64,000 bases of DNA from Mizuhopecten yessoensis (Eukaryota): positions 1,573,797 to 1,637,796 of the forward strand of contig NW_018405139.1 of the NCBI RefSeq assembly GCF_002113885.1, given 5' to 3'. The notes under the pieces are model-generated. The model did no database searches. It was not told where the DNA came from and was given only the letters and a program-made list of their open reading frames with translations. Below, one piece after another: positions 1-40,718 of this stretch. The position numbers and the translations under genes were made by a program. Every line of letters starts with the position of its first letter. Position 1 is the stretch's first letter.

Positions 1-227
1 TAGAAATTGATTTCACAAAGGAAACCTTAATTCTATTTCAAAATACGTTACCACAGTCATTATAATGCGAATTCGACTTACCGCAGTGGTGTCTCCGTGG
101 AGCGATGAAGGGTTCCAACAATAGAACCCATACCTCCGGAGGAAAAACTCAAAATACCTTTTCTTTTGTGACACAGAGCCTGATTACGACCAGCGTTCCG
201 GATTACGCGGAGAAGATATAATGAGGG

Positions 228-2360: not shown

Positions 2361-5261
2361 GCCACCTACACACCCGCCGCCATAAGCCACACCTGGCTGA
2401 CCTGACCAACTCCACCCAAACTGACCTACAGCAGGGCCTAAACCTGTAGGGCCAGTAAAACAAGCCCCACCAGAGGAGCAGCGTGCACCGTCAAACCAAA
2501 CGCAGCCGCGCTGGCACCTACCATAGGAAAACCTGGGGATGAGGCACAAGGGATAGAGCTGGTAGCATAGGTTTTTTTCACTTACCACCGGTGGACAGTG
2601 GTGGACGGCGTGCTAGACGCTATCACCACGCCAGGGGCTACATCAGGGATGCAAGGAACCCCGGGAGCAGACAAAACTGCCGGGGGCCGGTCTCCGACAC
2701 CAACACCCTCAGGAGTGGAGCGGACCGGCAGGAGGCTACCAACAGAAGCATCCGCGGACACAACANNNNNNNNNNNNNNNNNNNNNNNNNNNNNNNNAAG
2801 GGGGGGGGGGGGGGGGGGGGGGTGTGTTGAGAGAAAGGTCCGGGTCCAATGAAACAAATTATTTTACAACGGCCCCGGTACGGGTCGCAACCGCCGAACG
2901 AACCCCAGGGAAGATTCAACAGAGGTCGAAATTCCGCGGGTGTTCTCCTACCCCTCCTACCCGACTTACCTGAACGACCTCGCGGGCGGGGAGAACCACC
3001 GGCAGGAGTCGGCTGCCAGGCACGGCAAATGTCACACGGCTGCTCCAGAGAGCAAGACCGACAACTAAAACAGTAAGGGTGGGGGTCTCCATCTCAAAGT
3101 AAACAAACCGTCAAACGCGAACACGTGGCCGGAGCCTGGTCGCAAAAAGGCGCAAAATAAAGCAAAACGCTAAATTAAAACAAAATAAAGTAATATAGCA
3201 TTAAAGGATACAATATATATCGGTACAAACAACGCCAGTAGCAGTTGGAACCCGGTAGAAGAAACCAAAACACGTCCGTAAACACGGAAGCCTGAAGGAA
3301 TTTTGAAGTGGGAAGCATGGCTTCGTGTCTGATCACGTGCGTGAATACTGCCGTCTGATTGGTGGGTTTTCCAGGGGTTCCCCATGGGGGGAAATTCTTT
3401 ATTTACGTATGTAAAGAGCCAAGTAAGGTTGGAATATGCATTATAATGACTGGTAACGTATTTTGAAATAGAAAGGAAAACAAGATTTCATTCTTTCTGC
3501 ATGAAGGGCTATTTGTTTTTCATCAAGGTATGTTTTCTTCATTGTTTTCTATATGCCTTCAATTGTTAACAAAATAATAATTGAACAATAAATACATTAA
3601 AACGCCTTAATGAATAAGACACTTTGTTATATATTTGCCGATCTTACGCTCTTACTCCAGTAATGTGAATTTAAGATCCTGCTTGCGAGCAAATATGGTT
3701 TTCAATTGTTCAAATGCATAATTGTTAACTTTCCCTTCTTTATTAAAAAATATATCATTGGATTTGACATTTTTTTCAAAAGTTATATTCATTTTTATGT
3801 TTCTGACCAACGAACTCCATACCAGTACCAAAAAACCCGCCAATGAAACTATGCATGTTCTGATCAAATGCACAACCTGGTCAACGAATTCAGAATCATT
3901 GAGATGGAGGTTACCGTATGTAGAAAAGTCGTTGAAATTCTCTAGTGTTTTGCCTGCATTGTGTCAAGATCCTTTAAAGACCTATTATTTGGGTATTAGA
4001 GTGTTAATAAGCAGACTACTTGATTGGATTTGACGACTGCCACATGATGCACAAAAACACATGTCTTCCTAAACCCTTCATTTTGCCTGCGGTGGAGCTC
4101 CTATTTCATCTTTCGACCTCGCGTATAGATATATGTAGCTTGTTTTAAAGCAGTTTTTGTCACTGAATAGTTAATGCAGAATTTCAAATGATATTTGAAA
4201 ATATTTGAAATACATGTATTTTATGCCATATATAAATACGACAATACCCATCTATATAAACACCCTCCAAAACAGTTGTAATACCGTACATGACCTTTGC
4301 ACACCACAATGAATGACGCATACAAATAGATTATGCAATTCACTGGTGTACGTTCAGTTGCTAACCGGAAATGTATTACATCTAGTTTAGAAGTCGGGCT
4401 ATATATTATTTATTCATTTAGGAAGTCCTTATATATAGCTAAATTATAATTCTACTTACACAGTATTTGTTTAGTTTTGATCTATATGCTACAGTGTAGA
4501 ACAATGTAAGTTGCATGTAGTGAAAGACGATTTACGGGTCATCTGATCCCCTTTGATCCACCATTTAAGTTCAGTTACACATGACTACATAGTACAGCAC
4601 TGTATTACATTACAAGGGATGCAACTCTTACGTGATGATCACCATCAAAGTATTTGTCATCGTGTGCCTCAACTCAAAATTCATCTAATGTTAAAGATAC
4701 ATTTTTTATTATTAGACTAAGGCATAGAGACATCAAAGAATCCACAAGTTAATAAATCAATTGATATACCTCATTTATAAGCCATAAAAACGTAAATATT
4801 GAAGTTATTTTATTCCCACCTGAAAACATTAACACTATTTTAAAGTAAATCTTACTCCTTTGGGAAGCAAAAAAAAAAAAAGAAAAGAGGCTGAAAAACA
4901 TAAAACTCTTTCCTCTCGAAAGGCTGTTTTAAAATATAAATCCCTAAGAAATCCAAGTTTGTGCCATTTACGACAACATGCTTATATAATGTTATATCCA
5001 TCTTTTCGGTGCTTTGAAATCGATACAAATTATATCAAAATAAACAAATCAGATCTCAGCCAATTAGATTATAGGAATGTTTCAAGTCATTCAATAACAT
5101 TTGTATGCTTTAAGAAAAGCGTCTTTGATAGATTCTCGGAAAGGGAAATATTTTAGGCGAAGTGCCAAAACGAAGAAGATTGAATAAAATACGTTCTATA
5201 CATGCACATATACTGTCAATACAAGTATGTTAAAATCCTTCTCAATATAAAGTAGAAAATG

Positions 5262-6030: not shown

Positions 6031-7042
6031 CACTATAGAATATAAACATAATGTGAAGACAAAATATAAAATGATATAATATAAGAACGCTAGTAATAAT
6101 ACGAAAGTCAAAGTTGATACTAATACACATCAGTAGGAACCTAAGAAAAAGCAAATGAAAGAAAAACAATGTCAAAATAATCTGGGTAATTTCAGCCACG
6201 CATTTATCCACTACGTACATTTTCAAATGATTTCTGCGGGAAAATATCTTTAAAATGAATAGTATGTATGTTGAATATTTGCAACCATATTAGCTGTCGG
6301 TGTCTTTCCTAATATCATATGGGATAGGAATAAGATTAAATCACATAAATCAATAAATGACAAAAAAGTACACATAACAGAAACAAAATACAGGATCTTA
6401 CATGAGTTTCGATGTCATATTTAATTAATTGAACTCGTTCAAAAACCTGATTAAGTGCCATATCAATTATTGTACGAGTTTAATAAATTCAATATGACAT
6501 GAAATATCCTTTCCAGTAGGAAATAAGGATTCGGCGAGTGTATCAAAATGAGGTTAACGTACGTACTTCTGTTAAGCAATCAAGAAGTAATACTCTGTAC
6601 TACGAAAATGGTGGAATAGCAAGTTTGATTGTGTACAACGTATATGCCGAGAGGTTTCGTAAACACTAATACATTCTGTTGGCTATAAAATGGTTGCTAG
6701 TAAGACTCGCCTGATTGGATCATATGATGACGTGCCGGGTCGTTAACTAGAGCCTGAACAACGTCCAGTCGTGGTCTATCTGTCATTTATAGTTCTGACT
6801 GGTTTTGTCTGAAATGGACAAGGGCGATGTTTACGTTAAATACTCGGGATGACAAGAAGGATTCCCACGGAAACAAGGTAAGTCTGATCTAGTTCTAGTG
6901 TACAGGATAATGTGTTGTTAATTATCCAGTACCAGGTTTTTACCAAAATTATTAGAATCATTTTTGACAATAGTTTTCTGCCATGATATGGAACAAAATC
7001 ATTGAAGCTATTCTGATACGTTTTGTTTCTAAATAGATAAGA

Positions 7043-10000
7043 ATGATGTCACCAAGACTGCTACTGTACAGCATTTTAAGTGTGCTGTCACTGCCGGGAA
7101 ATGTGTACTCCTTAACACCTTTACAGTGAGTATAACTAGTAATTAACCTCCTAAAAAAAGCTAAAGTAGCAAGGTTAATTTTGGAGATATGACCATAAAG
7201 AAAATAGTCATCATCGATACTCAAGGGGTTGCGATTCATTTCGCTCTCTGCAACCCTGGAATATGTCATAGCAAAATCGAAAGCTCAGTACCAGTGTGCA
7301 CACATTGTTGATTAGATGAAAAGACTAGTTTGATCCTTTGATGAACATCAAAAGAATCTGACGGTCGCGTAACGGTACCATTGACTGGCTTTGAAATCGG
7401 GTGTGCTCCTCTGTAATCTTCAAAGTTCAGGTACATGTATCAACCTTAGCGATTGGTTAGTTTCATTTTACCTGAGACCAATCAAATAGCTCGCCGCATT
7501 CCTTCAATTTTGCTTTGACATATTCCAGGGGTGCAGAGAGCGAAAGTGAGAGTAACCTCAAGAGTATCGAGGATGGGAAATAATAGGTAGGTATAGAAAA
7601 GTAACGACAGGAGATCCCAGCCGCCCAGAGACCAGCATTTACATTTTGTTTTCTTCAATGAACCTTAGTAGAAGACATAGGCTTAACTCCAAATTCTGCA
7701 CGGCACCTTCATTAGTCGCCTATTACGTATATGCAGTGGGATACAGCAGGTTAATGTTTTCCCGAACTTAAATAGTTTACATTCAGAGTTTGTACAAATA
7801 TTAACTTACACATTCATAGTAATTACAATGATTGATTAACGTCTTCATAATAAGTTTAATAACGCAGTATAGAGGATTGACAACGCAATACATATTTGTA
7901 TATTTGCAAATATAAACAAAAACATTTGTTCATTAGGTACTTCGTCCAACTATCTACCTTGTATTACTTTTTCAGGAGGGATGAAGTCGAAAACATGCTC
8001 CAGAAAGACCATTCGACGCCTCCATTTTACCATACAGGTAATAACCCGTTTTGCTTTAGGGTGACGGTTCGCACATTCCTTCAATATTGGATATGCCTTC
8101 CTGTATTGTACCGATGTTCAACAATTCTTTAATACAATGAAGCATGTATGCCAAACAAAATTAAACAACATCAATATTCTGAGTTAATAGTATTTGCACG
8201 AAAATATTCACCTTTATGCTTTCTGCTTCCTAAGGAACACCTGCAGAAATATATATAGTCATATTCGTGTCTCGCGATATGTCGGCTATAAACCTTTATG
8301 CTGTCATCAATCACACTATTATATCTATTATATGGTTGTTATAGTTTCCTGATGATCTGCGTTTCCCAGTTCGGTCTGGTTATATCGATAATGCTAGTTT
8401 ACATATTCAGACATACCACACATTTTAAGGACTCTATTTTTTCTGAAGATTGTGTAATAGTGAACAATTACTGTATGTAGTTAGATATTTATTTACAGTT
8501 TTCAACTCTCATTTTACTGCTTTTGCTGTTGAGGTGTTAGATGCGACGAAAAACATCACGATGGCACACCTGTATCAAAGGGTGATCACTGCCGATTTGT
8601 TTTATGAATAACTGGACACTTCTCGTATGATCCCGCAAATAAGTTAAGTTTTATCAAAACAGTGTATCTGTTACTCTAGTAGTGGTACATATCGGATTAC
8701 CCTAAATTCTATAAAAAAGTTGTAAAAACGAAAAAAAGCAATACGCTATCCTCAGTATACTTTATTGTTTGTTAGCATTTGTCAGTTTAGACAGATACAA
8801 ATTTAATTGATACACTTAATCTATAACCATAACGTTATTTATGTTTACTTTTCATCCAGGTAATCGGACTGTGATACGAATCAGCATCTATATGACAGAA
8901 ATGAGATTTTTGAAGCGAGTGAGTATATTAAGTTGTGTTACAATCTAAACTCAATAGTGCAGTTTTATAAATCGAAATTAGCTTATGATACGTGACAAAT
9001 GATTTAAGAATAATAAAAATTAAAAAACACGGAATTTTGTGTATGTTTATTACCGGAACTTGATCGCTTGCAATCCTATTACATATCTTACTCAATTTTT
9101 TAATTAAGATGTTACGTCCTCGTATACAGCTAAGGTCATACGAATGCAGTCTCAACCAAAGTTTAGCCTTCTCATAAGTCATTATAAGTGTCACTGCAAT
9201 GAAATGTCATAATCTGGACACGGTAACATGACACTCCACCGGTAACATTATACTGATAACAGGCCAACCAGTCCTAGATGCAACACATTGTAGGCTGAAC
9301 ATAAAGAAAAAGGCAACAAGTACGATTTGCTACCAATTTGGTTTGTCTCACCCAGAGGACATTATCCATAAAGTTCCTCGCTTTCGCAGGTGTTCCAACA
9401 CCAGGACCAAAAGCGAAGTTTCACCAAGAAAAGACATTTGTCGAAACAGAGAGATAACAAAATGATCTAGATGTTGAAATTGATGCAGTAGACATATAGT
9501 GATCGCTGTTGTGTTCCCAGTGGATGGAACCAAACAATTTTCAAGTATTTCCCGTACTAATTGCCTCTGACAACATGTAACGTGTTACGTGAGGTAAAAC
9601 ACATCTATGCAGAGGACACAGAAGAAACCTTCACCGCTTCTATAGGGAAAGGAAATGGTCACTGTTTCTAAAACACTACATCTAAAATAAAATATGACAT
9701 GTTATTCACTTCATAAATTAAAATCGTCGAAACAATTTATTCTTAGACTTTTATTACTTCATATAAATCACACAAAACAATGAAAGGTTACACTGTATTA
9801 ATAACGACTTACGGTTTCACGAAAGCGTTTCCTTTTTATAATAATTACCATAACATTGAGACAGTTTCTATTTTATCGGAATATATATTTCTCAATTAAA
9901 CAAACCTTCACGATAATATATCTAGCTAAAATCATACGTGATTTATAGGAATTTAAACAATATTTGTAGATTTTCTTTTAATCAATACGTCGAGTAAGGT

Positions 10001-13000
10001 CTGTCTAAGCATCACCTTACACATTGACTATATTGCATACCGTTGGTCAATGTGCGGAAGGCAACGGGTTCTGTCCCAGGCAGAGCATATCTTAGTTTTT
10101 AATAGTGATAGTTGTTCCGGTTGGAACACTCTGATGGGTGCCTTTGGCATTGCATTAAAATGGACATCGGATCTTCGCTATCGCAATGAGGCAAATGCAT
10201 CAACATACATCATCCAGTAATCACGCTTACATTATACAAATGAAGTCATGTCTTTGAATGACTTAGCTGTTGATACATTTGCTTTATGATAAACCCTTTC
10301 AATCAAACCAAATAAGAAAAAAATCATTGTTTTTATTGCAGACTGAAGCTGATTTTACGTTTTACTATTATCAAATATGGGACGATCCTCGCCTCAAGTA
10401 CCCTTTTGCAAATACTACTGATTTTGGTTTGAAAGACTACCACGTGGTTCGAAGAAAATACTTTGATAACATATGGCTTGCTGAGAGTTACATCGAAAAT
10501 GAGTTACACTCACGTGTGCATGATTCGTCCATGTCCAATCGTTTTGTCTGGCTTCTCTCCAATGGAACACTTGTGTACAGTATGAGGTAGGTTAATAAAT
10601 TGTCATACAAGAAATGTATCCATGGATGAATATATTTCGATTTTAGTGAGGTTATGAGGTGAAAACTTCATTTGAGCACGAGTAATTTATATTATTTTCA
10701 TAGATGACGAATACCTGACCAAAAAAAAAAAAAAAATCCTTATGAGTACATTTATTTTCTGTGAATGGTTCATTTCTATATTTATCATTAGTCTGATCAG
10801 AGGGCACATATTTTGTTTCAATAAACTTAGCAACGTGTAATCGGTTCATTAGGAGTAACCGAGTAAGAGGGAACAACTTGCATAAGCCATAGTTATATCC
10901 GGCCACATCTACTGTTCATGACGTTCAACATTTGTGCATCGTTTGCAGAAAATTTACACAGCTCCGCCCACAAGTATTGTTGTCGACGTCATGGAAATTT
11001 TCAACTTCTATGACCAGGTTTTGAGATGATTACTCCAGTTTGTGGAAATAATGGAAAAAATGCTTCGTCTGATTTGTACAGGTTTTTCAATCACAAATAT
11101 TCATTGTGCCTAGTATAATGTGATAAAAAAAGATTCCAATAACCATGTACTTCAGGGGTCGGTATTGACAGATAACACTGCTGAGCATTAATGAATGTTT
11201 GAATATTTCAGAATGACTGCTGGACTTGTTTGTAATTTGCGAGGAGTTCTATTTCCAAATGCTTTATTTGTTTGCAGACTCAAGTTTCGGATTCGTAAGT
11301 TCACACAATCTTTGTTTACAATATAGTATAAACGTTAGGAACCCCTTCTGTTGTTTTGTTTGAGGGCCCATGATGGCTCAGTGGTAAAGGTATCTGACCA
11401 TCTCTGATCAGTTTCCCTCCACCACGGCTTGCGGGTTCGAAACCACCGCGAGCAGTTGCAAGGTACCCATCCGCAGGTCGGTGATTTTCTCCGGGTACTC
11501 CGGTTTTCCTGCAATCTGTGTTGGAGTAAACGTTATATGCTACCTGACACAATATACCTATGATTTTTAATAATTAGAGGTTGTAGGCTATCGTACACAT
11601 TATGTCTGTGTTAAATACGCCATCATTTAATACAGAAACAAATGATTTAAAGAATTTAATATACGTATGTCATGTAAACCTTTAGGAAAGACATTCTATG
11701 TCGCAGTAAAGTGGCATACAGCCTTAACACACAATATTTGTATCCATCATATAATAATGTTAAATTGGACAACGTTTTAGTTATCACCAAATACGTATAC
11801 ATTATTAATATTATGGATATTAAGGGAGGAACACAACAGATTTTGATCGAAAAAATAAAATATGACCATTCTTATTTCGTATTTTTATTTCATTTATTTT
11901 AAGATTCGTACACGAAAGAAAAAGTATCGTTGGAATGGGATACCCTGCAGAAGCCTATTATTCCTATGGACTTCGACAATGAGGATGTTTCGATGGATAA
12001 ATGGGAATTACTGCATTGTACCTTAGACGATAGCGCAGGTATACAGAACTTCAATATCAAAATAAAAGTGTAGATATACATCCATACAGTGTATAAAATA
12101 ATCAATTAATTCAAAGCATTAATTATCAAATATCCAATCAAATAATATAACAAAGGAGTGACGAATGGCGAAAATATACAACCAACTGCGAAAGAGACAA
12201 TTCGTCCGCTAAATCCTCTCCCTTGTGCGGCGTCTCGATTCACCACACTAGGGAAAGGTATTGGATCGGCAACCAACAGACCTTCTACTCTCGTGTTATG
12301 AACGAACAATAACCGCTTGTTCTCTGTCTGTGTCCCTTTCCGGCGGTTATTTGACAAGCTGGTTCATTGATATGCGTCCGCTCACTCTCCAGCTTAGTGC
12401 TGCATGTCGGTGTATGAGACTAATTACAGACGCTGTCATATTTAATAGACGAATTGTCTGTTTCTCAATGTGTTCGAAACTCCTTTGTAATACTTATTTC
12501 TTCTAAACTCACTAATTCTGATAGCATATCTTTCACAAGAATAGATATTCACCATATATTTACCAATTAAAATTGTATTTTGAGGGATTCTGTTCCATAT
12601 CTCAATTAATGTCATTTGACGAATCTACGTTGCATATACTTATAAAGATTGATTTCCCAGCTTCAGAATCTTTCTCCATGCTCACTTTTCCCGGGATTAT
12701 CGAATCTCTTTGTTGTTGATCGCGCACACAGTATCATTTGTCAACGATGCGGTCAGTGTAAATTCTACCTTATTTTGTCTACTCTTTTGAATTGCGTCTT
12801 ATACTCACTCATTTAAAATACATTTATTTGACATAACCAATACGTTTTTTGTGATTTGCAAATATTTTTGCTATAAATACATTGCATTTTTGATAATGAT
12901 TTTTAAGGCAATATTTCCCGTAAATTTCAGTTGTAGATAGTTCCTGCTTGGAGCTCAAACTCGGCGTCAAGGTCGGTTTTGCGAGTAATGCTGTACGTAT

Positions 13001-13957
13001 TTTCATGCCAAGTATTTTCATCGTATTAGTCGGATGGTTAAGTTTCTGGATCGAGCGATCAGAAGTGTCAGCAAGAATTAAACTTGGTACACTCTCAATG
13101 ATAGCAATGATCACGGAACAGGTAGGGGCGAAATTCTTCCTACCTGTGGATTTCAAAGTAACAGCATTCGAAGTTTGGTATATTATGTCTTTAGTTTTTG
13201 TCGTTGCTGCAATGTTTGAGTATACATTCGTACATGCTGTGGATGTGTTCCAACTGAAAGTGAAACGACAGGAGGATCAAAGAAAAGAAATACGTGAAGT
13301 GTCAGGCAGCGATGTGGATACGAATGGAGACAGTAGGGTTGGTTCTACGGACCAGATCGAAATGGACAAGATTGATTCGGTAGATATTTATTATATTACT
13401 TCAGTATTTGTGAAGCCCAAAGCCATATAAAAGGTGCAGTATATCATATTAAGTTAACAATCAGTTACTGAAGAAAATATCAATAATTGAATTTCGTTAT
13501 TATTAAAATAGTTTATGGTTTAAAAACCCCGAAAATATATCATTTTGCAACTAGTTGGTAGTAACACAAACTGGCACACTTTTAAATTGATCTCATGAGA
13601 ATTATAATAGTAATTCAAACTGAACCCACATGTTGTAAGGTCAGTGCAAAATTAAATGAACCAGTAAACGAAGTAATCGGATAATTAAGACGACTTATTT
13701 AACCATTCGTGTATTTTTCTAGTGAATAATATTATTTTGTTTCATGCTCTGTGTTCCAGGTGGGTCCCATCAATGATCAAAGTATCAGTACAGAAGATAA
13801 CAACGACTTGATGAACACCTGTTGTGCCAGGTACATCATGATGATTTCAACGGGTCGCGTGGAGAAATACTTCCGCATTTTGTATGCTATCGCCTACCTT
13901 GTTTTCCAGTTTTTCTTCTGGACTATTTCACTGAACTATGAAGAAACCAATATTTGA
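7043..13957 (+). CDS. Cys-loop ligand-gated ion channel subunit, GlyR/GluCl-like orphan, paralogue A (~437 aa). Exons 7043-7125, 7976-8037, 8860-8918, 10342-10586, 11212-11294, 11904-12038, 12931-13379, 13760-13957
   Basis: All introns GT-AG with consistent phases. Signal peptide MMSPRLLLYSILSVLSLPGNVYS. Cys-loop CNLRGVLFPNALFVC (C-x13-C). Second loop-C disulfide. M1 PSIFIVLVGWLSFWI, M2 SARIKLGTLSMIAMITEQ, M3, M4. Probable 5'UTR exon ending at donor 6877/6878 and acceptor 7035-7036. Confidence 0.92.
7209..7575. mobile_element. MITE-like element with ~70-bp imperfect TIRs (first coding intron of paralogue A)
   Basis: CATCATCGATACTC...GAGTATCGAGGATG inverted arms. Internal and terminal similarity to 59589-59897, with a fragment near 14200-14270. 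Confidence 0.75.
11362..11517 (+). mobile_element. tRNA-derived SINE with V-type domain, 3' truncated
   Basis: A box TGGCTCAGTGG, B box GGTTCGAAACC, V-domain motif TTCTCCGGGTACTCCGGTTTTCCT. Confidence 0.75.
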
Positions 13958-16900
13958 TAGAAGGACGATATTTACCGTTGGACTTTGTTAGCAAGAAAGA
14001 AAGCTTTTCACTAAGAAATATTTCAATATAAGCACGGTTTTCGACATGTACGAAAGTGTTATGTCGAAAACGTATCTTACGTTAATCAAATAAAGAAACA
14101 GTATCAAATCCTGCGTTCCCAACAAAAGCGATCGGATTATGAAAGGGTTGATATACTGGAAATTTGTTTCTATCAAAAATTGTCAAACTCTCCTCTGAAC
14201 ATCCTCGGAATTCCAGGGGTAACGCTCACTCGCATTCTTTGCATCACTGTCATGGTATAATCAAAGACACGCGTTAACCTATTTTTAAACCCTAGGTTTA
14301 TGCCTGTCCTTTGAATGTTGCAGACGAGCGACATCCAACTTCGAAACCGTCACAATGATGTTAAAAGCTTACATTACATATTACATACTATTAAAAGATA
14401 CATACTGTATATTGAATCTGTTTATTTATTGATTCTGTTTTGACTGCGTTATAATTATTAGTACAAAGCAGATATTCAGTAACAGCTGCAGGCACAGTAT
14501 GAAATAATTACTAATTGTAATAATTAATATCGAGTGTATTAACGCACCCCAACAGTTCCGGGTTTATCACCATACAACAGACACAGAATAAATATTAGGT
14601 TGAGGCTATCAACCAACTTCAAAAAACAAAAGATAAGCCGAGTATTTAATCTTACAATGCAAAATATCTTTTGGAAAAAATAATCATCGTCCCAGACAAA
14701 GAAGGTCTAGCCTCTCATTGCCTTACACGTAACACGCGTTTGACTGAATCTATCAGCACACTACACGAAACAGATGTCAGTTCGATCCTATCATATCACT
14801 ATAAAGAACAAAGGATGAACATCTCACTTGAACCTTGATTGTGTTATTTAGTTTTTGTCTCCATATCAAACTGTGTGATTTTCAATATAGAAGTTGCTGT
14901 AACGAACAAACGGCTTAAATTGTTTGACGTGGTCATCATATTCAAGAACTCGATACGTTAGTTTAGTAAGTAGCAATACAAAAGGGCGCAATCAGAACAA
15001 ACATCTGATCAATATTAGGTCTGCACATACATATATCTACAGCTTCATTAAGCTGATGTAGTTTCTTATGACTCGTTAGACGAAAAGAAAAAAAAGGAAA
15101 AGGTTTGTGTTACTTCGACATGCTCTGTATTTAAATATCTATCTGCTTTTCAGCTGATAGGTTGATGAGAGACAGGCTTACGTAATTCGAGCACATTAAT
15201 TGAACACACTGCTAGATGAAGAATGGGAAAAATTAGTCGACAGAAAATGGAAGGGAGAAAAATGAAACAGAGGAACAAGAAAATTATAAAGACTAATTTT
15301 AATTACATTTCAAAACCTTGGAGCAAACGAAGTCTGTTCGGAAACCTCATTTTTTCCCCACAAACAAAGGATTAGAAAAATGGGAGATAGGAATCATTTA
15401 CTAAAGCGGAGGAAAGAGCAGGAACAAGAACTCTCCTCAAGAGGCATTTTGGGTAGGTTACTCAACGAGGTTATATGGCTCGCTGCTATTATCCGTAAAA
15501 TGTTGTAACGGAAATGTTATAAAATGTGTAAGTCAAGTAAAATCCTTAGTTTATGTTGCAAAGATGTACCAAAACCAACCAATTTACATCGCTTCATCTG
15601 CAACTGAACTGTACATTTGTAGCTTTGAATTATGTGAATAGAAAGCATCGTTTTGATAGTTCAATACTACACATGATATGTTCACGTGTCAAAATATAAT
15701 ATTCTATTCTGTATATCTTTACTGACGTGTTTGCCTTTGATATTAATAATATTTTACTAGTTAGGAAATAAAGGCCTTTACAGTAAGAGGATACAGACTG
15801 TATAAAACCACAGAAGGATGCTACCAACACATCTGTCCACAGAAGTTATTACTAAACTCATTGAATTCTTCCCTAAGAGCATTGGTGGACACTTGAATCC
15901 GTCTGTCTGCTAGTCACAGCTCTCTGCTTTAACCAAACAGTAATTAATAAAAAAAAAACTGTACTTCGGCTTCAAATTACATCGATTAGCATTTTTGCAC
16001 GCTTACTGATGTGCATATTTTTTCAATCAAAATATGTTATTAGCTTTCCACATGATGCTCGATACGCAGGTGGATAATCAGTGCATTTAATGAAGTTCAT
16101 ATAACTGAAAGCTGGTTTGCCTAACAGCATTATTAAATGCGAAACTATAGGTTACGTTATAAGATGACGCATAACAAGTTATTGAACTTTGCATGCGCAT
16201 ATCTAAGTAAGGTCACACCAAGGGAAATAACTTTTTTTTTAAAATGCGTAGCAAAGATTTGATATCGTTGATTAGAAATCTGAAAACGGTTGTGTTTTTG
16301 TGAAACAAATAATTTTATGACATGTTTCTGCTCATTTTCTATGAACAAATAAAAGTTGCAAGAGTCAATAGATTATTTTGATAGTGGTCAGATAGAGCAA
16401 CATATCAAGTTGAGATATTTTGTCAGCATAAACAGGCCTGTTGTTGTTTAACACTGCTGCATTTACTTTTTTATATTTTAAAATACACCACGAACTTTGC
16501 TGAACTGCATGTGCATTAAATGAAGTATCCGCTGCCGCATCTCAAAAGCGAGGAAGTTTTTGATTTCCGTCCCCTTACCATGACAAACCAAAGTTCTTAA
16601 CATTGTTACTTGCTGCGCTCTGCTTGACGTTGAGCTAAAAAATGGTTAGCGGGAAATGTATCCGTTGCTTGTATAATGTGAACTGGTAGAGTGCTCTGCT
16701 GCTTTTGGCTTGGCATTGCAGTGAAATCGTGTGTGTAGCACTTTAAAGTTTGCATCATATCCGTGCTATCGCAAGGAGGCAAATACACCAACAAACCGCC
16801 TTCAGCACACACGAATACATTACACGCACTATGTTATTGCCGCCAAAGTTATTAGATTGTTATGACGATTCTTACAATGGTTATATGTATTTAGAGGAAA

Positions 16901-17039
16901 AGTCGAGACAATGTGGTTATTTCATTTCACATTAATTTGTTTGGATTATTATATATGTATTGCCATTGATAAAAAATTACAATCAATTCATTATCATCAA
17001 GAACTCAAAATGCATTACCCTTGGGATCTTGAAATTCAT

Positions 17040-17200
17040 TATCCTCCTGTAGAATTTGAAATTCATTATCATTGATTACTTAAAATGAAGGACGCCACAA
17101 ATTCGTTTTCGTCAATTTCATGTCTTGACATTTTCTTGGAGAATGACAATAATATCCGCCTCACCACCAAATTCAATGACAAACAATTTTCACGTTGAAA
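17040..17200 (+). mobile_element. Penelope-like element RT remnant
   Basis: Degenerate YPPxLEI..KDATNS..S.SCLDIFLENDNNIRLTTK..DK, typical of the Penelope RT C-terminus. Confidence 0.55.
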
Positions 17201-18469
17201 ACTTTTTCTCGGCAGATCAGTAATATTCGCCAAATGCATCCTACTATAAATTGTAGAATAATTTGTTTTTGTCCTTTTGTTTTCTTTTAGTTCATATCAT
17301 TGTTTGGTTCTATCAACTTTGAGCTCCCAAATGATTCTCTTGTTCTATGTACATTATCTATTTAATTGTCTACGTCTAGACCTACTGCGGGGATACATGT
17401 ACGTTACCGTTACACTAAGTCTACTTGTCTTGACCTGGCAGTCAAACTACTCTGATAAACATTATACATTGTGTGGTGATGATTATGTGTCTCATAAAAT
17501 ACTTGTGATGGATGTCACTAATATACCTTACTGATCATTAATGGCCAGGTGTTTTGGAAGTATTAGGGTTTAGTTAGTGTTCACAACCTATCTCCAGTTA
17601 CATCTACACACCAGCTACATACGGTAAGTAAAAGTAGTGTCTTTAATGTTTTACATGATTCATTGTGATAGAATACAAGATATTGTATTTAAATGGTCTA
17701 CTGCTTATAAAAATCATAATTCCTATTTATGCTTTCTTTTTCTTCCTTTCTTTTTTTAACGATTCGTTATTTGTATTTCCATTGTGGTCTTTTGCCATTT
17801 TATCATTTATTTCTATGCTTATTTAACTATTCATTTGCGATTTAAACTGCGAGGGTAAATTAGGTGCCACAGTTCGTTGTTTTTGATAATATATATTTTA
17901 CAATCTTCCGCTGATTGACGTCAGCTTGCAAATGTTTGTCATAGTTTTGATGAGAAACGATTAATGCACTTACATTATAACATTTTAACTCTCACATAAA
18001 ATAACACATTCATTTTTTCCTAAAATAATTTTACGCGTGTAGTGTCATGTTCACTATCTTTTGTGTGTATTTTTTAAATCAGTTTTAAGATGATAATTTT
18101 CAAGATTTAAGCTAACTGATTAAAAATATAAGTTTATTTATGTATCCAGTATTAATTAGAAAACAGATATATATTTTATAAACGTTTCCGTTTCTATGAG
18201 ATCTTAATTTAAAAAATGTATTAAAATACTGCAACATAAGTACAAATTATGTACTGACATAGAAATCAATTATTTAAGCGATGTATCGAGTTATATATTA
18301 TTGTCTATCTTTTATTTGAAATATTTGCTTACTAAGAGTTAGTTTACTCAATCAATGGTATAACTGAGAGTTTTTAACTAATACTGACTGCGATAGTTTT
18401 AATAATTACATTATAATTCTATGCGAATCCTTTCCATTTGTTCGAACCGTTTGTAGGCAAAAAGATATC

Positions 18470-21400
18470 ATGGCGGCCATAATATTGAGACCATTTTGCA
18501 TTTTGTTTGCAATATCCTGTGGAGGTGCTACAGCTGAATTATCCCCATCACAGTAAGTGTATAATATACTTATATCTTCACGTATTAACCAGACGCACCT
18601 GCTGACTTATTTGGTAACAAAATTGAAGAGTTACTTTTGATTATTGTCTTACTATTTCTGGTGTCAATTTAACTTTTATTCCTATGTTTCAGGCGATATC
18701 AGCTAGAAGCCATGCTACAGAAAGACAATTCGAAGCCTCCTTTTTATCACACAGGTAAACGTTACCTTTCTGAAACTCATCAGAAGCCATCCTCAAAGGG
18801 TTACGCCTTCTTAGATTCTCTGCATCTGGAATATGTCTTGGCGAAATCTAATTATCTTTAGTCGAAACCTTGTGGATGTTTTAAGCAGATTGTTTTTATC
18901 CTTTGGTGTACATAAAAAACTGGAATTTCGAGGATGTTCGGACGCATGAAGTAATTATCGCCACCTCGGTAACAGAAACACTTGCGTTTTAGCATAGCTT
19001 CATCGGGAGAATTTTGCACAAATTTTACACATGTGCTGAGAACAAAAATAGACTACATGAAACGCTAGCTTTTGTTGTATAGACACATATTTGGGAATGG
19101 TCGAAAATGTACTCTCAAAACAAAATGCAGCATTTTTTCTTGAAAAATGATGAAACCCATATACATAATTAGTCCACATCATCATGTACATGCCAACTGT
19201 AGTGCTGATTCTGTTTTCAAATTTAGATACATGTTATTTTACAGGGGTTATTAATTGTACAAAAATATCCCCCATGACCATCGTATGCTACTCTATACTA
19301 TATAGCTACTACCTTTACCTAAACTAGTGTTTATGTAAATCGTGTCAGAATGCATTTCAGCTACTACAAGGCTACAACTAACAAATAACTGATAGTAGCA
19401 GAGTTCCGTCGTTCGTACACTCGTTGGAAAGATATTTTTCTGTTTATCCTGATGCATAATGAAGTAACATTGATACATAACACATCAATGGAGGCACGGT
19501 AGTCTAGTGGCAGGACGCCGGGCTTGTGACCGAAGGGATGCGGGTTCGAGTAACGGCACGCCACTGCGTTGTACCATTGAGCAAGATACTTTACTCTGCT
19601 TGTTCCAGTCTACTCAGCTGTAAACCAGTACGTGGTTGGGCAGTTCTAGAATTTTGAATGCTAGCTGTTAGCGCCGAAATGGCAGCTCCGGCTGTATGCT
19701 CCCCAGGTAGTTGAGAAAGATATTGGCTGGTTACAAAGGCCCTATCACCACAGATAATAATTTATGAACCGCTTTGAGACGACCTACGATTTAGGTTGTG
19801 ATAAAGCGGTAATAAGAACCACGCATTATTATTATTATTATTATTAATGGACGAGGGAAGGAGTGGGGTAGGTGTAGGGGTATATTTGTCCTACTCCCGT
19901 TCCTTTGCTAATGCCTTATTGTTTTCTATTTAAGGTTACCAAACAAAGATCACCATCACTGCACATATGACCCAAATGAGGTTGATTGATACGGTATGTT
20001 TTTAAGAAAATATTTTTTAATAAAGTAAGAACTTAATCAGATAACATACCTTTAAGATATTGTATTGATTCGCTCTACATCTGGCCAAATAATTTGACCG
20101 AAAACCAATACACGTATATATCGTTTCATTTTCTCTTTTACATATATGGTTAAACTCATGCAGTAGAAAATTTCAGTTAATCACAAGAGCAGATCCATTA
20201 ACCTTTCACCACATTTGTTAATATCATAGGTAATCAAAGCTGAAAAATAAACATTTATAAACATCAACTCCATATTAATTGTGTATATTTGTGGACAAAA
20301 TATAATTATACAAGCAAGACAATTGAAATGATTGGCTAATAATATTTGGCTTCAGGTCCATTGAGTGGCATTGAGTGTAAAATGATTCTTTCACCCGTTT
20401 TCATATATTTCGACTTTCTGATATTTATGAAATACGTATGATTAATTTGTTATAGCTTATGTAACAAATTCGAAATGTTGTCCTTTTCATTTATTTTGAA
20501 CGAAGAAGGCAATGATTTGAAACGTTTTCTTCTCTTTTTTAGTCGGAAAGCGATTTCACATTTTATTACTACCAAATTTGGAACGATCCTAGACTCAAAT
20601 TTCCCTTCGGAAACAACTCGGACATCGACAGGAATACTTACCACGTGGTCCGACGTAAATACTTCGGAAACATATGGCTGGCAGAGAGCTACATCGAAAA
20701 TGAGTTACGCTCACATATCCACGATTCGTCAATGTCCAATCGTTTTGTATGGCTTCTTTCGAACGGAACTGTCGTATACAGCATGAGGTATGTTTTGAAT
20801 GGGTTTTTTCATAGAAATAAATATATGACGATATTTTACATTTATCTTGGCTATTATTTTTACTTTTACTACGTCGTACAAACTATTCTAGTAAATGAAT
20901 GATTCAATTGGCACATGAGGTATATTTTGATGTTTGTGTTTATTGTTTTTTTATAGTTTATTGGTTCTTTTTTCATAGATTCTATTATAAATTATCATGA
21001 CAAGTAATAAGAGAAATACTTTTTATGTAGAGGCATTTTATTTTATATTTCAATATTTGTGTGCATTTTGGTTTAGCGTTTTGTTTCTTTGATAATAGAT
21101 CCTATTAAAATTTCCATGGAAAGTAAATCTCAACGTTCTATATATAGAGGCATTGGATTTGGTACGAATTCAAGTTTACTTTATAAAACTATTTAAAAAA
21201 AGTAATGAAAGTTATTTTTTTATAAATTCAAAGTTTTGATTAAGGACGGTTGTTTCAAACTTTCCAATTGTTTTAGAATGACTGTGGGGCTATCGTGTGA
21301 TCTGAGAGGCGTTCTATTCCCCAACGGTCTATATGATTGTTTGATGAAGTTCCGGATCCGTGAGTAATGATTTTAATGTTATTAAGAAGAAGTATTTGGG

Positions 21401-24213
21401 GATGTCTTTCCTGGAATGTCCAACAGGACGACAATTGAACTTTGTTGGGGATTTCATAATATGTTTAATTCAGAAAATTCATTGGAGTATCAATTTAAGC
21501 AGAATATTTATATATATACTGAAAATCAGTTTATATAGAATATCAATACAATTGGAAGATAAAATTGATATAGGCTATCAGTATAATTGCTTTTGAATAT
21601 CCTTTTAAGTAAATCCTTGGTCAGATAACAAGGGTTCGTTACAAATGTCTAATACTATGTTTAGGTGTAGTGTTACCTATATAAGTATATAATATGTGTA
21701 TTAGACATCTGTAACGAACTCTTGTGATCAGATAATGGAAAAATACTCTTAAGGTGAAGGATTTCGAACATGATTAATTGCATTTTTCAATAGATAAAGG
21801 CGTTTCTGTGTTCTGACAAAATGTGTAATACATGCATGAATGCTAAATTTATTGCTAGTATGCCAGGTCATACATACATTATTTCATATTTCATTTGAGA
21901 TTCGTACACAACGGACCAGGTATCAATGGAGTGGGATTCCGTCAACAAACCGCAGATAAATGTAGATTTTGACAACTCAGAAGTGGCGGTTCATGCATGG
22001 CAGTTCTCTAAGTGCTCCTCAGATACAAGTGCAGGTACGTTGTACTGTACCAAATGTTAGGTAGTGTAAGTTGTTCTTGGTTGTATTAATTTGTTCCATT
22101 TAAACAAGACTGGACCACTTGTCTCATACTATTTTCACAGAAACAAAATGTGTAAAATGAAATTTCAGAGAAAAAAACTGAGAAAAAAAGACAAAACTAT
22201 GCAAGCACGGATGTAAAACAAAATGGAGCACCTGAAGTAATTATTAATTAAGCATAAAGATAGGAATTATAAGACATCTGTATCAGACATTATATACGCT
22301 TACAGTTTTACATACCAGTATACAATGCATCTCAATCATTAACTTGAAGGAAGATTAATTTAAAATCCTGAAGCATATAGAAGTTCAATACATATTTTCA
22401 CAAGCGAACACTTAAAATTACAATACATATTTCCATAATACACGTATGGCTTGAAATGTGCCAAATGAAAATTGCTGAAATAAAACTGACTGGCTAAAAC
22501 GAAAGTGCATTTTTGTTGATAGAGTGATGGTGAGTTGATAATATATGCAAATCTTGGTTCATTTATGGTAATGGATGAATTTGGGTACTCTATTGTGTCG
22601 GATGCCAACCTCAAAAATGTTTAATACACTAAAGGACAAACAAACAACATCAAATTTACATAAAATATATTCCTAGTTAGACATATGCTGTGCACCCTTA
22701 CCTAAGGCCTGGTTTTATTTGTATTTCAGTTGTTGATAGCTCCTGCTTACAGCTGTTGGTAAACATTCACTTCAGCTTTGCCAGTAACGCTGCACGATTG
22801 TTTTTGCCGAGTATTTTTATCGTCCTTGTGGGATGGCTGAGTTTTTGGATAGAGCGGTCGGAGGTATCCTCAAGGGTAAAGCTCGGAACGTTGTGTCTGT
22901 TAGCCATGATCACCGAACAAGTGGGGACAAAGTTGTTACTGCCAGTCGAATTCAATATATCATCGGTAGAGGTGTGGTTTGTGATGTCTCTAACTTTCGT
23001 TGTGGTGGCCATGTTTGAATATACGTTTGTACATGCTGTAGATATCTTCCAAGAAAAGGTAAAACGACAAGAGGAAATGAAAAAGAAAATCCGTACACAG
23101 ACAGGTGGAATCGGGGATACCCAGGACATCAAGCAGAGAAGCAATGTAGATCTTATCGACATGAACACACTCTCATCGGTAAGCAAATTTGAATGAAAAA
23201 ATATATACTTACAACAATTATGAAACAAGTTATTTTCAACTTATATTGGTTAAAGGTTTTTTTATGTGGGAGAAACTGGAGTCCCTGGAGTAGACCCACT
23301 TGATCGGACAGGTGACCCAATACCTTTTCACGTCTGATCGGGGAATAGAACCCCGGTCGTTTTAAACAGTTGATTATCCTTTACGTCTTAGCTACCAAAG
23401 TTCCGATCTGATTTGTTCAGTAGTAATAATTAATTTTCGACTTAAATAACGATTTTGCAATTTTTTGATATATTATTTCATGTTTTTGTGGGTAAAAATT
23501 GTTTTCGAAATTACTTTTGATCTAATAGTGACAATTTTCGTTGGGGATTTAATTTCGCGCCATCTTTGGTGACCGCGAATATATCGAAATTAAATCCCCA
23601 CGAAAATTGCCAACTATACCGTACATGTCTGTAGAAGACAAAAAGTTATTCCAAAAACAATTTCAAATATATTATAATACACTTATATACCTTTGAGATT
23701 ATATTTTTGCGTGTTTTAATCTTTATTATTTTCTTGGTCAAAACGGTGTTTTTTTTCGAAAAACAAGTCCAGAAAAAATATTAATCGTATCATAGAATGA
23801 CTTCAAGTTAAAGATCTGGTCATAACAATGGAAAACAATCCTATGTATTCAGATTTGTGTGAATTCACAAAATATTGAACCGACGAAAAAGAAAAGCTGT
23901 ACAGTAATTTGGGATTAAAATCATACTCCACTCACCGTCAATATTGCCAATGAAAAGTAAGATATTTTCTATTTCACAATTTCGTCACATATCTAAAATG
24001 ACTGTTATTTAATTGTAGGATGGTTCTGCAAGTGGAGAAACAACCGGAAATAGAAATGATGACCTGATGAACACCTTCGGTGCCAAATATATCATGATGG
24101 TGCCGACAGGTGTCGTTGAGAAGTACTTCCGGATCCTGTACCCGGTTGCCTATCTCTTCTTCCAGTTCCTGTTTTGGACAATCTACCTTAATTACGAAGA
24201 AGTATATGAATAA
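18470..24213 (+). CDS. Cys-loop ligand-gated ion channel subunit, GlyR/GluCl-like orphan, paralogue B (~436 aa). Exons 18470-18552, 18693-18754, 19935-19993, 20543-20787, 21277-21359, 21900-22034, 22730-23178, 24019-24213
   Basis: First seven coding exons match paralogue A in size (83/62/59/245/83/135/449) and phase. Signal peptide MAAIILRPFCILFAISCGGATA. Cys-loop CDLRGVLFPNGLYDC. M2 SSRVKLGTLCLLAMITEQ. Stop TAA 24211-24213. Confidence 0.92.
19490..19846 (+). mobile_element. Full-length tRNA-derived CORE-type SINE with (ATT)n tail
   Basis: A box TAGTCTAGTGG, B box GGTTCGAGT, CORE-like TTGAGCAAGATACTTTAC...CAGCTGTAAA, L2-like 3' end CGCTTTGAG...AAAGCG, (TTA)n tail. Confidence 0.8.
23265..23360 (-). 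mobile_element. V-SINE fragment
   Basis: Plus strand GTGGGAGAAACTGGAGTCCCTGGAGTAGACCCAC is the reverse complement of the V-domain motif. B-box complement GGGAATAGAACCC. Confidence 0.6.
23533..23623. mobile_element. Short inverted-repeat MITE fragment
   Basis: AATTTTCGTTGGGGATTTAATTTCG ... CGAAATTAAATCCCCACGAAAATT, ending TATACCGTA. Confidence 0.6.
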
Positions 24214-40671: not shown

Positions 40672-40718
40672 TCAGAGAACTTTAGGAGACTGGATTACTA
40701 TCATCAGATAATCCTTCT
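40672..40718 (-). CDS. DYNLRB: Alternative (distal) last coding exon of the roadblock gene, giving a 97-aa isoform ending EKDYLMIVIQSPKVL*
   Basis: Pyrimidine-rich acceptor GTTTTTGTGTTTTCAG, same phase as 42538-42587, homologous peptide, TGA at 40672-40674, downstream AATAAA (plus-strand TTTATT ~40300). Confidence 0.82.

What the first reader, a model, noticed from the sequence alone, without database searches (positions are those of the whole stretch)
7043..24213. Tandem pair of orphan GlyR-like Cys-loop channels with a rebuilt ligand pocket: candidate novel sensory receptor family
Seen: two intact paralogues with matching exon architecture and a loop-C disulfide, placing them with GlyR/GluCl-type subunits. 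Manual alignment to GlyR alpha1 shows the agonist site is remodelled in both. Loop A WKPDLFF becomes WLAESYI, losing the WxPD motif. Loop B ESFGY becomes RIHSY. Loop C has no aromatic residue (CTLDDSAVVDSSC / CSSDTSAVVDSSC). The carboxylate-binding loop D Arg65 becomes Tyr (TFYYYQIW), and loop E gains Phe/Trp (NRFVWLL). Known: cephalopod chemotactile receptors arose by similar pocket remodelling, but from the nAChR branch. Inference: these are not glycine/GABA/glutamate receptors. They may be an anion-branch-derived receptor family for a different, possibly hydrophobic or environmental, ligand or for pH.
Basis: partly seen in the sequence, partly recalled or inferred. Interest (0 to 1): 0.8.

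Follow-up and report, generated by a model that had tools for sequence, protein, structure and literature searches.

The report
Orphan scallop chloride-channel receptor gene pair
Two neighbouring scallop genes encode unusual members of the glycine/glutamate-receptor type of chloride channel whose transmitter pocket has been rebuilt and then kept almost unchanged across scallops, so they probably sense something other than the usual amino-acid transmitters; nothing yet shows that they are sensory receptors.

Summary
The window is Mizuhopecten yessoensis. Two intact + strand genes (7043-13957 and 18470-24213) match the RefSeq proteins P0152 and P0153 at 100%. They share eight exons of almost identical length and are 62% identical.

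Only two of six residues of the published amino-acid-agonist motif survive.

The genes are not scallop oddities of one species. Each has one-to-one orthologues in Pecten, Argopecten and Ylistrum, with the same tandem order in Pecten. Groups C and D are further paralogues, Pinctada has a fragment, and Mya and Mercenaria form a sister group.

This bivalve clade (support 100/99, very long stem) sits among molluscan GlyR-like subunits. It lies apart from the few vertebrate GlyR, ecdysozoan GluCl and GABA-A sequences sampled.

The rebuilt pocket is under strong constraint (orthologue dN/dS about 0.13; pocket loops evolve as slowly as M1-M3). Gene 1 is transcribed and correctly spliced. Gene 2 expression was not shown.

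The reading "not a Gly/GABA/Glu receptor, uncharacterised subfamily" is supported by inference. The reading "sensory receptor family" is not: the family is small and stable, and no tissue data were obtained. The ligand remains unknown.

The parts
7043..7125 (+). Gene 1 (group A) exon 1. It runs from ATG 7043 and encodes the signal-peptide-like MMSPRLLLYSILSVLSLPG. The RefSeq model P0152 starts further upstream (exon 6827-6877 joined to 7037).
7976..8037 (+). Gene 1 exon 2 (N-terminal helix, RDEVENMLQKDHSTPPFYHT).
8860..8918 (+). Gene 1 exon 3 (beta1-beta2, GNRTVIRISIYMTEMRFLKR).
10342..10586 (+). Gene 1 exon 4, holding loops D (FYYYQIW), A (WLAESYI) and E (NRFVWLL...VYSMR).
11212..11294 (+). 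Gene 1 exon 5, holding the Cys-loop CNLRGVLFPNALFVC (the FPxD Asp is replaced) and the start of loop B.
11904..12038 (+). Gene 1 exon 6, holding the rest of loop B (H)SY, loop F and the first half of loop C (CTLDDSA).
   Evidence: The RNA junction 12038^12931 is supported.
12931..13379 (+). Gene 1 exon 7, holding the second loop-C Cys (VVDSSC), pre-M1, M1-M3 and the start of the short M3-M4 loop. M2 reads SAR-I-K2'-L-G-T-L6'.
   Evidence: A spliced RNA contig covers it.
13760..13957 (+). Gene 1 exon 8 (rest of the M3-M4 loop, M4, stop codon). The 3' UTR reaches at least 14283.
18470..18552 (+). Gene 2 (group B) most likely exon 1 (MAAIILRPFCILFAISCGGATAELSPSQ). It has the same length and phase as gene 1 exon 1 and is used by the GenBank model P0160. 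RefSeq P0153 uses 15380-15504 instead. Neither exon was covered by RNA here.
18693..18754 (+). Gene 2 exon 2.
19935..19993 (+). Gene 2 exon 3.
20543..20787 (+). Gene 2 exon 4 (loops D, A and E, with the same motifs as gene 1).
21277..21359 (+). Gene 2 exon 5 (Cys-loop CDLRGVLFPNGLYDC).
21900..22034 (+). Gene 2 exon 6 (loop B end, loop F, CSSDTSA).
22730..23178 (+). Gene 2 exon 7 (VVDSSC, M1-M3; M2 reads SSR-V-K2'-L-G-T-L6').
24019..24213 (+). Gene 2 exon 8 (M4, stop codon).

Best explanation
What it is. [quoted passage not shown]

Shown here:
- Both reading frames are intact.
- Exon structure is conserved.
- Each gene has one-to-one orthologues, and the tandem order is kept in Pecten.
- Purifying selection is strong and bears hardest on the pocket loops and M1-M3.
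- Gene 1 produces spliced transcripts.
- The predicted fold is a canonical pLGIC fold.

Inferred:
- The subunits assemble, alone or as A/B(/C) heteromers, into chloride-permeable pentamers. The M2 start has Ala or Ser at -1', Arg at 0' and Lys at 2', and lacks the -1' Glu of cation channels.
- The orthosteric pocket was repurposed once, before Pectinida and Pteriida split, and has since been conserved.
- It no longer binds an alpha-amino-acid carboxylate. The loop D Arg is Tyr, the loop B Phe is His, and the loop C Thr and Phe are lost.

My committed guess for the agonist: a small cationic, amine- or choline-like endogenous ligand, roughly 35%. It would be held between an acidic and His-bearing principal face (Glu in loop A, His in loop B, Asp/Glu in loop C) and an aromatic complementary face (three Tyr in loop D, Phe and Trp in loop E).

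Second choice, roughly 25%: proton or metal gating through the same titratable cluster, as in the mite channel SsCl.
For: Identity and gene structure.

Family, fold and alignment: Pfam; PDB sequence search with GlyR alpha best at E 2.9e-34 and a residue-level alignment; AF2 plus Foldseek.

Isolation of the subfamily: an exhaustive phmmer of the M1-M3 exon against 1.84 billion representatives found only 4 hits at E <= 1e-30. Identity then drops steeply to about 30%. Named members are only Pectinidae and Pinctada.

Tree: the bivalve clade has support 100/99 on a stem of 1.44 substitutions per site. Groups A and B are each supported (99/98 and 96/99) with 3-4 genera each. The clade sits in a molluscan GlyR-like assemblage with support 90/92.

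Pocket conservation: Tyr at the Arg65 position, Trp in loop E, Tyr in loop A and Arg-x-(His)-Ser-Tyr in loop B are invariant or nearly so across 12 sequences.

Selection:
- Gene 1 against gene 2: pN 0.23, pS 0.78.
- Gene 1 against its Pecten orthologue: omega about 0.13. dN is 0.051 in pocket loops, 0.116 in the rest of the ECD, 0.058 in M1-M3 and 0.31 in the ICD.

Tandem order is conserved in Pecten.

Transcription: a 1006-nt contig is spliced at 13379^13760, and the 12038^12931 junction is seen in two runs from different studies.

Precedents: the amino-acid-agonist motif (PMC4338433) and a pH-gated anionic pLGIC using His/Glu in its binding-like region (PMC13065796).
Against: - No functional data exist, so the agonist class is inferred from residue chemistry only.
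- The monomer model cannot show the inter-subunit pocket.
- Lys at 2' and Leu at 6' in M2, together with loss of the Cys-loop Asp and of a clear pre-M1 Arg, are unusual. They could mean altered or absent agonist-driven gating.
- Gene 2 transcripts were not seen, but only its 5' exons were tested, in four runs chosen for gene 1.
- Gene 1 depth is low.
- The tree lacks HisCl, pHCl, RDL, LCCH3/GRD, Aplysia GluCl and annelid GlyRs. The nesting among molluscan GlyR-like genes is only moderately supported and involves a very long branch.
Confidence: 0.65

Rival explanations
1. They are accessory or modulatory subunits. They would have no agonist site of their own and would function only when co-assembled with canonical GlyR-like or GluCl-like subunits, tuning conductance or gating in the way GlyR beta or GABA-A gamma/delta subunits do.
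For: - Four of the six agonist-motif residues are lost.
- The coupling elements are unusual: the Cys-loop Asp and the pre-M1 Arg are replaced.
- The pore has an odd Lys at 2'.
- Heteromeric assembly is common in this branch (general knowledge).
Against: - Both faces of the pocket are among the slowest-evolving parts of the protein. dN is 0.051 in pocket loops against 0.116 in the rest of the ECD.
- Loop C keeps 7 of 13 positions across groups A-C. A site that binds nothing would be expected to drift.
- All four paralogue groups share the rebuilt residues, so A/B interfaces would also be 'rebuilt' on both sides.
Confidence: 0.15
2. They would be an anion-branch analogue of the cephalopod chemotactile receptors: an environmental chemosensory receptor expressed in mantle edge, tentacles or gill, perhaps for hydrophobic cues.
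For: - The pocket is remodelled in a lophotrochozoan pLGIC, as in chemotactile receptors and the orphan Alpo4 (PMC10338036).
- The complementary face gained aromatic and hydrophobic residues.
- No bivalve chemoreceptor repertoire of this kind has been described (PMC11682238).
Against: - The family is small and stable, with about one gene per group per species and one-to-one orthologues across four genera.
- Purifying selection is strong.
- The principal face is acidic and polar rather than greasy.
- No tissue information could be obtained because sample names are coded.
- Depth is low in the RNA runs laid.
Confidence: 0.12
3. They are decaying or functionless duplicates that merely retain open frames.
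For: The defining agonist and coupling residues are lost. Gene 2 transcripts were not detected in the four runs laid.
Against: - Both frames are intact and all splice sites are canonical.
- Synonymous sites are saturated while amino-acid identity is 62%.
- Omega is about 0.13 against the Pecten orthologue.
- Orthologues are intact in four genera.
- Gene 1 mRNA is spliced.
Confidence: 0.02

Closest known systems
Vertebrate glycine receptor alpha subunits (GlyR alpha1-4) and lophotrochozoan glycine-gated channels such as Alpo5/6
   Same: - They are the best sequence and fold matches.
- They share the Cys-loop, the loop-C disulfide and four TM helices.
- They share an anion-type -1'/0' (Ala/Ser-Arg).
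- On my own recollection the 83-nt Cys-loop exon and the general exon plan resemble GlyR/GABA-A genes. This was not tested here.
   Different: - Identity is only about 19-20% over the Foldseek structure alignments. Alpo5/6 are reported at 45-50% to GlyRs (PMC10338036).
- Loop D Arg65 is Tyr, loop B Phe159 is His, and loop C Thr204 and Phe207 are lost.
- WxPD in loop A is lost.
- M2 reads SAR/SSR instead of PAR, with Lys at 2' and Leu at 6'.
- The Cys-loop Asp and the pre-M1 Arg are not conserved.
Glutamate-gated chloride channels (ecdysozoan GluCl; molluscan Aplysia-type GluCl)
   Same: They share the loop-C-disulfide branch. The scallop clade groups with molluscan 'GlyR-like' sequences and lies near the GluCl and GlyR clades.
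   Different: The scallop proteins lack the loop D Arg that is required for the agonist carboxylate. They also lack the additional Arg (loop G in ecdysozoans, loop A in lophotrochozoans) that defines glutamate recognition (PMC4338433). Here the loop A position holds Leu-Ala-Glu.
pH-gated anionic pLGICs (mite SsCl, insect pHCl)
   Same: They are anionic pLGICs without a classical small-molecule agonist motif. In SsCl, titratable His and Glu in the binding-like region (beta7, beta9, beta10) set the pH sensitivity. The scallop proteins carry an invariant loop B His, a loop A Glu and acidic residues in loop C.
   Different: No positional equivalence of the titratable residues was shown, and no phylogenetic link was tested. 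SsCl keeps uncharged polar pore residues, whereas the scallop proteins have Lys at 2'.
Cephalopod chemotactile receptors and the orphan Alpo4
   Same: They are lophotrochozoan pLGICs that lost the signature agonist residues and are thought to bind non-transmitter ligands.
   Different: Those derive from the cationic nAChR branch and have Glu at -1'. Chemotactile receptors also form lineage-specific expansions with demonstrated sensory expression. The scallop genes are anion-type, few in number, stable in copy number, and of unknown tissue.

Membership tests
[quoted passage not shown] | Neur_chan_LBD plus Neur_chan_memb domains; extracellular beta-sandwich plus four TM helices | tested here: met
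   Both Pfam domains score above their cut-offs in P0152 and P0153. The AF2 model shows the beta-rich ECD and helices M1-M4. Foldseek matches GlyR with TM-score 0.85.
[quoted passage not shown] | Cys-loop: two Cys separated by 13 residues | tested here: met
   The loops read CNLRGVLFPNALFVC and CDLRGVLFPNGLYDC.
GlyR/GluCl-type (loop-C-disulfide) anion-channel branch | Second disulfide bracketing loop C | tested here: met
   C-x11-C aligns with GlyR C198-C209. The pair is present in all GlyR, GluCl and molluscan rows and absent in GABA-A delta.
GlyR/GluCl-type (loop-C-disulfide) anion-channel branch | Anion-type selectivity filter (Pro-Ala-Arg at -2' to 0'; no Glu at -1') | tested here: inconclusive
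   The filter reads SAR (gene 1) and SSR (gene 2). There is no Glu at -1' and Arg at 0' is kept, but Pro at -2' is lost and Lys sits at 2'. Selectivity was not measured.
GlyR/GluCl-type (loop-C-disulfide) anion-channel branch | Phylogenetic placement with GlyR/GluCl rather than GABA-A | tested here: met
   In the careful IQ-TREE the clade sits inside a molluscan GlyR-like assemblage (90/92), apart from GABA-A delta and pi. Sampling of reference families was limited.
Amino-acid-gated anion channels (GlyR, GABA-A, GluCl): the 'amino acid agonist motif' of Lynagh et al. 2015 | Loop D arginine that binds the agonist carboxylate | tested here: not met
   It is Tyr in all 12 family sequences. The motif is defined in PMC4338433.
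Amino-acid-gated anion channels (GlyR, GABA-A, GluCl): the 'amino acid agonist motif' of Lynagh et al. 2015 | Loop B aromatic residue, and loop C Thr plus aromatic residue | tested here: not met
   Loop B Phe159 is His. Loop C has no aromatic residue and no Thr at the aligned position.
Amino-acid-gated anion channels (GlyR, GABA-A, GluCl): the 'amino acid agonist motif' of Lynagh et al. 2015 | Loop A aromatic residue and loop E serine | tested here: met
   Loop A has Tyr (WLAESY). Loop E has Ser in VYSMR, aligned to GlyR LYSIR.
Cephalopod chemotactile receptors | Origin in the nAChR (cationic) branch; lineage-specific expansion; expression in sensory epithelium | tested here: not met
   The fold, tree position and M2 are anion-branch. 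There is about one gene per group per species. Expression site could not be tested because samples are coded.
pH-gated chloride channels (pHCl/SsCl) | Titratable His/Glu cluster in the binding-like region that controls gating | tested here: inconclusive
   A conserved loop B His, a loop A Glu and loop C Asp/Glu are present. Their equivalence to SsCl H206/E146 was not established, and no SsCl sequence was available to align.

The most novel reading that the evidence does not exclude
The subfamily could be a new functional class of anion-branch pLGIC. It would be either an environmental or internal chemosensor for a ligand class not yet known to gate Cys-loop channels, or an ion/pH sensor. Its ECD-to-pore coupling would be rewired to work without the near-universal Cys-loop Asp / pre-M1 Arg pair and with a Lys ring at 2'. 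That would make it an anion-branch counterpart to the cephalopod chemotactile receptors.
Probability: 0.15. Interest if true: 0.8.

Novelty: new variant of a known kind. Interest (0 to 1): 0.45.

Why it matters
Bivalves carry very large pLGIC repertoires, and almost none of these channels has a known ligand.

This small subfamily is a clean target for finding its ligand, for four reasons:
- It is old, predating the scallop radiation and shared with pearl oysters.
- It is under strong constraint.
- It has a sharply defined pocket motif that differs from the amino-acid-agonist motif.
- It departs from two features usually treated as near-invariant for gating and permeation.

Finding its agonist would widen the known chemistry of anion-selective Cys-loop receptors. 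It would also test how far the coupling interface can change while the channel still works.

There is a practical point as well. The RefSeq names (GABA-A alpha-6-like, rho-1-like, GlyR alpha-3-like, GluCl-like) are mutually inconsistent and should not be used to infer transmitter systems in scallops.

Tried and rejected
- Exon 3 candidate. I first guessed exon 3 of gene 1 at about 9970-10037 (KVCLSITLHIDYIA). It has no usable donor site and was replaced by 8860-8918 once the Pecten protein served as guide.
- Gene 2 first exon. RefSeq's first exon (15380-15504) has no signal peptide, no counterpart in gene 1 and no RNA cover in four runs. I prefer 18470-18552, but neither exon is proven.
- Word-index profile searches. 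Two searches with the alignments A1 and A2 added no new relatives and no named reference sequences. In the first two searches I also set E-value cut-offs too strict to list distant named relatives. As a result the tree lacks HisCl, pHCl, RDL, Aplysia GluCl and annelid GlyRs.
- Unidentified contig L003. Regular-expression and tblastn searches for the LBD pocket motifs found only the M1-M3 and M4 exons of two tandem members.
- Literature. Five searches found no paper on these genes or on an anion-branch bivalve orphan clade.
- Earlier scan notes. Word searches returned nothing relevant.
- 5' ORFs. Pfam found nothing on the GC-rich long ORFs at the start of the window.
- Spliced models. Exons were searched by reference. 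The public proteins P0152 and P0153, which map 100% to the window, stood in for the joined products. My alternative gene 2 model (exon 1 at 18470) was joined only inside scripts, for translation and dN/dS. It was never searched or folded.
- The run of N at 2766-2797 was left untouched.

Full report
**What is there**

The window is eukaryotic, at about 34% GC. Open frames between 7 and 24 kb hold pieces of two Cys-loop receptor genes. Exon translations given by reference match Pfam Neur_chan_LBD and Neur_chan_memb. They also match GABA-A and glycine receptor chains in the PDB.

An exhaustive phmmer search of the M1-M3 exon against 1.84 billion representative proteins gave 2367 hits at E <= 1e-3, but only 4 at E <= 1e-30. 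The best is a full-length Pecten maximus protein, P0001, at 79% identity. After a handful of 41-59% hits, identity falls to about 30%.

A word-index search with P0001 returned only scallop proteins, from Pecten, Argopecten, Mizuhopecten and Ylistrum. Their automatic names contradict each other: GlyR alpha-3-like, GABA-A beta-like, alpha-6-like, rho-1-like, GluCl-like.

Two of these proteins, P0152 and P0153 from Mizuhopecten yessoensis, map onto the window at 100% identity through GT-AG introns. The window is therefore Yesso scallop, and both genes are already in RefSeq.

**Gene models**

Gene 1 runs 7043-13957. RefSeq adds a further 5' exon at 6827-6877.

Gene 2 ends at 24213. RefSeq starts it at 15380-15504. 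An older GenBank model (P0160) uses 18470-18552 instead. That exon encodes a signal-peptide-like start, has the same length and phase as gene 1 exon 1, and is homologous at its end (ELSPSQ against SLTPLQ). With it, gene 2 encodes 436 aa.

Exon lengths are 83/62/59/245/83/135/449 in both genes, and every intron is GT-AG. The Pecten orthologue has the same internal exon lengths. The two proteins are 62% identical.

I sent only exon references or the public protein ids to search and fold tools. The alternative gene 2 model was never searched or folded.

**Check of the pocket claims**

- Loop D IFLRQQW becomes FYYYQIW, so Arg65 is Tyr.
- Loop A WKPDLFF becomes WLAESYI.
- Loop E NKLLRI becomes NRFVWL.
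- Loop B ESFGY becomes RIHSY.
- Loop C CTKHYNTGKFTC becomes CTLDDSAVVDSSC.
- The Cys-loop FPMD becomes FPNA (FPNG in gene 2).
- M2 PAR-V-G/A becomes SAR-I-K.

Lynagh et al. define an 'amino acid agonist motif' shared by agonist-binding GluCl, GlyR and GABA-A subunits. It comprises aromatic residues in loops A, B and C, a Thr in loop C, an Arg in loop D and a Ser in loop E (PMC4338433). Here only the loop A aromatic residue and the loop E Ser survive.

The AF2 model is confident outside the N-terminus and the M3-M4 loop (pLDDT 80). It best matches GlyR alpha structures, with TM-score 0.85 and about 19-20% identity.

**Relatives and history**

A 41-sequence alignment and its motif table show how the rebuilt features are distributed.

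- Scallop groups A, B and C and a Pinctada imbricata fragment share the rebuilt pocket: Tyr at the Arg65 position, W-L-x-E-S/T-Y, F-V-W, R-I/V-H-S-Y, and an aromatic-free loop C.
- A fourth scallop group (D) and the Mya and Mercenaria relatives keep W-x-P-D.
- All of these share the unusual M2 start (SAR or AAR in place of PAR) and Leu at 6'; Lys at 2' is shared by all but group D, which has Ser there.

A careful IQ-TREE analysis used LG+C20 PMSF on 36 rows and was rooted with the window's own nAChR-like ORF.

- All bivalve rows unite with support 100/99 on a stem of 1.44 substitutions per site.
- Groups A (99/98) and B (96/99) are each resolved, with three or four genera in each.
- The bivalve clade sits among molluscan 'GlyR-like' sequences (90/92). 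It lies apart from vertebrate GlyR alpha, mite and tardigrade GluCl, and GABA-A delta and pi.

Reference sampling is thin. HisCl, pHCl, RDL, Aplysia GluCl and annelid GlyRs are all missing. The long stem also makes the exact attachment uncertain.

In Pecten the A gene is followed on the same strand, about 6 kb downstream, by a second pLGIC gene. Its first exons match group B. The tandem pair is therefore older than the split between these scallop genera.

An unidentified eukaryotic contig in a metagenome also holds two tandem members.

**Constraint**

Between the two window genes, synonymous sites are saturated (pS 0.78) while pN is 0.23.

Against the Pecten orthologue, gene 1 has omega of about 0.13. 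By region, dN is:

| Region | dN |
|---|---|
| Six pocket loops | 0.051 |
| Rest of the extracellular domain | 0.116 |
| M1-M3 | 0.058 |
| Intracellular loop | 0.31 |

The rebuilt pocket is thus one of the most constrained parts of the protein. That argues for a working site rather than a decayed one.

**Transcription**

A k-mer search with gene 1 exons 4-8 (10342-13957) found 14 small, probably transcriptomic runs from six studies. They hold 8-23% of the sampled words, where exons make up 31% of the stretch.

Four runs were laid on 12900-18800 (5901 letters), with these results:

- One 1006-nt contig is spliced exactly at 13379^13760 and extends into the 3' UTR.
- The unaligned ends of contigs in two runs from different studies equal the last 30 or more bases of exon 6. 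This supports the junction 12038^12931.
- Two raw-read RNA runs showed almost no cover.
- No run covered gene 2's 5' exons or RefSeq's 15380 exon.

Gene 1 is therefore transcribed and correctly spliced at low level. Gene 2 expression is not shown. Sample names are coded, so the tissue is unknown.

**Interpretation**

The identity of the genes is secure. They are two old tandem paralogues of a bivalve-restricted, highly diverged subfamily of the GlyR/GluCl-type anion-channel branch.

Several observations together make canonical glycine, GABA or glutamate gating unlikely:

- The carboxylate-binding Arg and the loop B and loop C aromatic residues are lost.
- An acidic, His-bearing principal face and a Tyr/Phe/Trp-rich complementary face are gained.
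- These residues are strongly conserved.

The pocket chemistry points to a cationic small agonist, or to protons or metal ions. The mite channel SsCl is a precedent for an anionic pLGIC gated through His/Glu in the binding-like region (PMC13065796).

Other first-stage notes on this stretch pointed out the missing Cys-loop Asp / pre-M1 Arg pair and the odd M2. One search confirms both. However, a basic residue often sits one position before the usual Arg in groups A and B, so 'loss' of the pre-M1 charge is less certain than loss of the Asp.

The sensory-receptor idea has no support so far. The family is small, its copy number is stable, and it evolves slowly.

No paper on these genes was found. 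Orphan lophotrochozoan pLGICs such as Alpo4 are a known phenomenon. The finding is therefore a well-defined new variant of a known kind, not a new kind.

Noticed in passing
window 56111-57544 (- strand): An intronless 477-aa ORF encodes a complete nAChR-type Cys-loop receptor. It has a Cys-loop CMANVAYYPTDRQIC and a cation-type PGER at the start of M2. Pfam LBD scores 3.4e-28 and TM 1.5e-16. It fits the retroposed, intronless nAChR expansion described for bivalves (PMC6896357). I used it only as the tree outgroup.
   Followed up: partly
window 1-4000, especially 228-2588 (- strand): This stretch is GC-rich (47-53% against about 34% elsewhere) with strong A-over-T skew. It holds a 786-aa ORF and overlapping long ORFs. 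There are no Pfam hits and no tandem repeats. It may be a mobile element, but this is unexplained. The N run at 2766-2797 was left alone.
   Followed up: partly
window 15380-15504: RefSeq's first exon for gene 2 (MGDRNHLLKRRKEQEQ...) lies 3.2 kb upstream of the next exon. It lacks a signal peptide and had no RNA cover in the four runs laid. The exon at 18470-18552 looks like the true start.
   Followed up: partly
window 10177-10237 and 16765-16825: A short repeat is shared at 77% identity between intron 3 of gene 1 and the intergenic region. Contigs of 31-32 nt at high word depth (11-42) from two RNA runs lie on 16764-16793, suggesting a dispersed, expressed repeat.
   Followed up: no
window 14424-14441 and 17890-17908: The same contigs and reads of three runs touch these two 18-19-nt sites in opposite orientation and then run on into unrelated sequence. 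This is probably a transcript from elsewhere that shares a short inverted motif.
   Followed up: no
L001 17885-18133 (Pecten maximus, between the A and B genes): A stretch translates to a 39%-identical copy of the M2-M3 region of the A protein. It may be a relic exon of a further duplicate.
   Followed up: no
L003 9923-11295 and 15395-17292 (metagenome contig of an unidentified eukaryote): Two tandem members of the same subfamily are present, as M1-M3 and M4 exons at 43-55% identity to scallop and Pinctada. Their ligand-binding exons were not found by motif or tblastn search.
   Followed up: partly
window 40672-42587: Another first-stage note reports a roadblock dynein light-chain gene with duplicated terminal exons here. 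I did not examine it.
   Followed up: no
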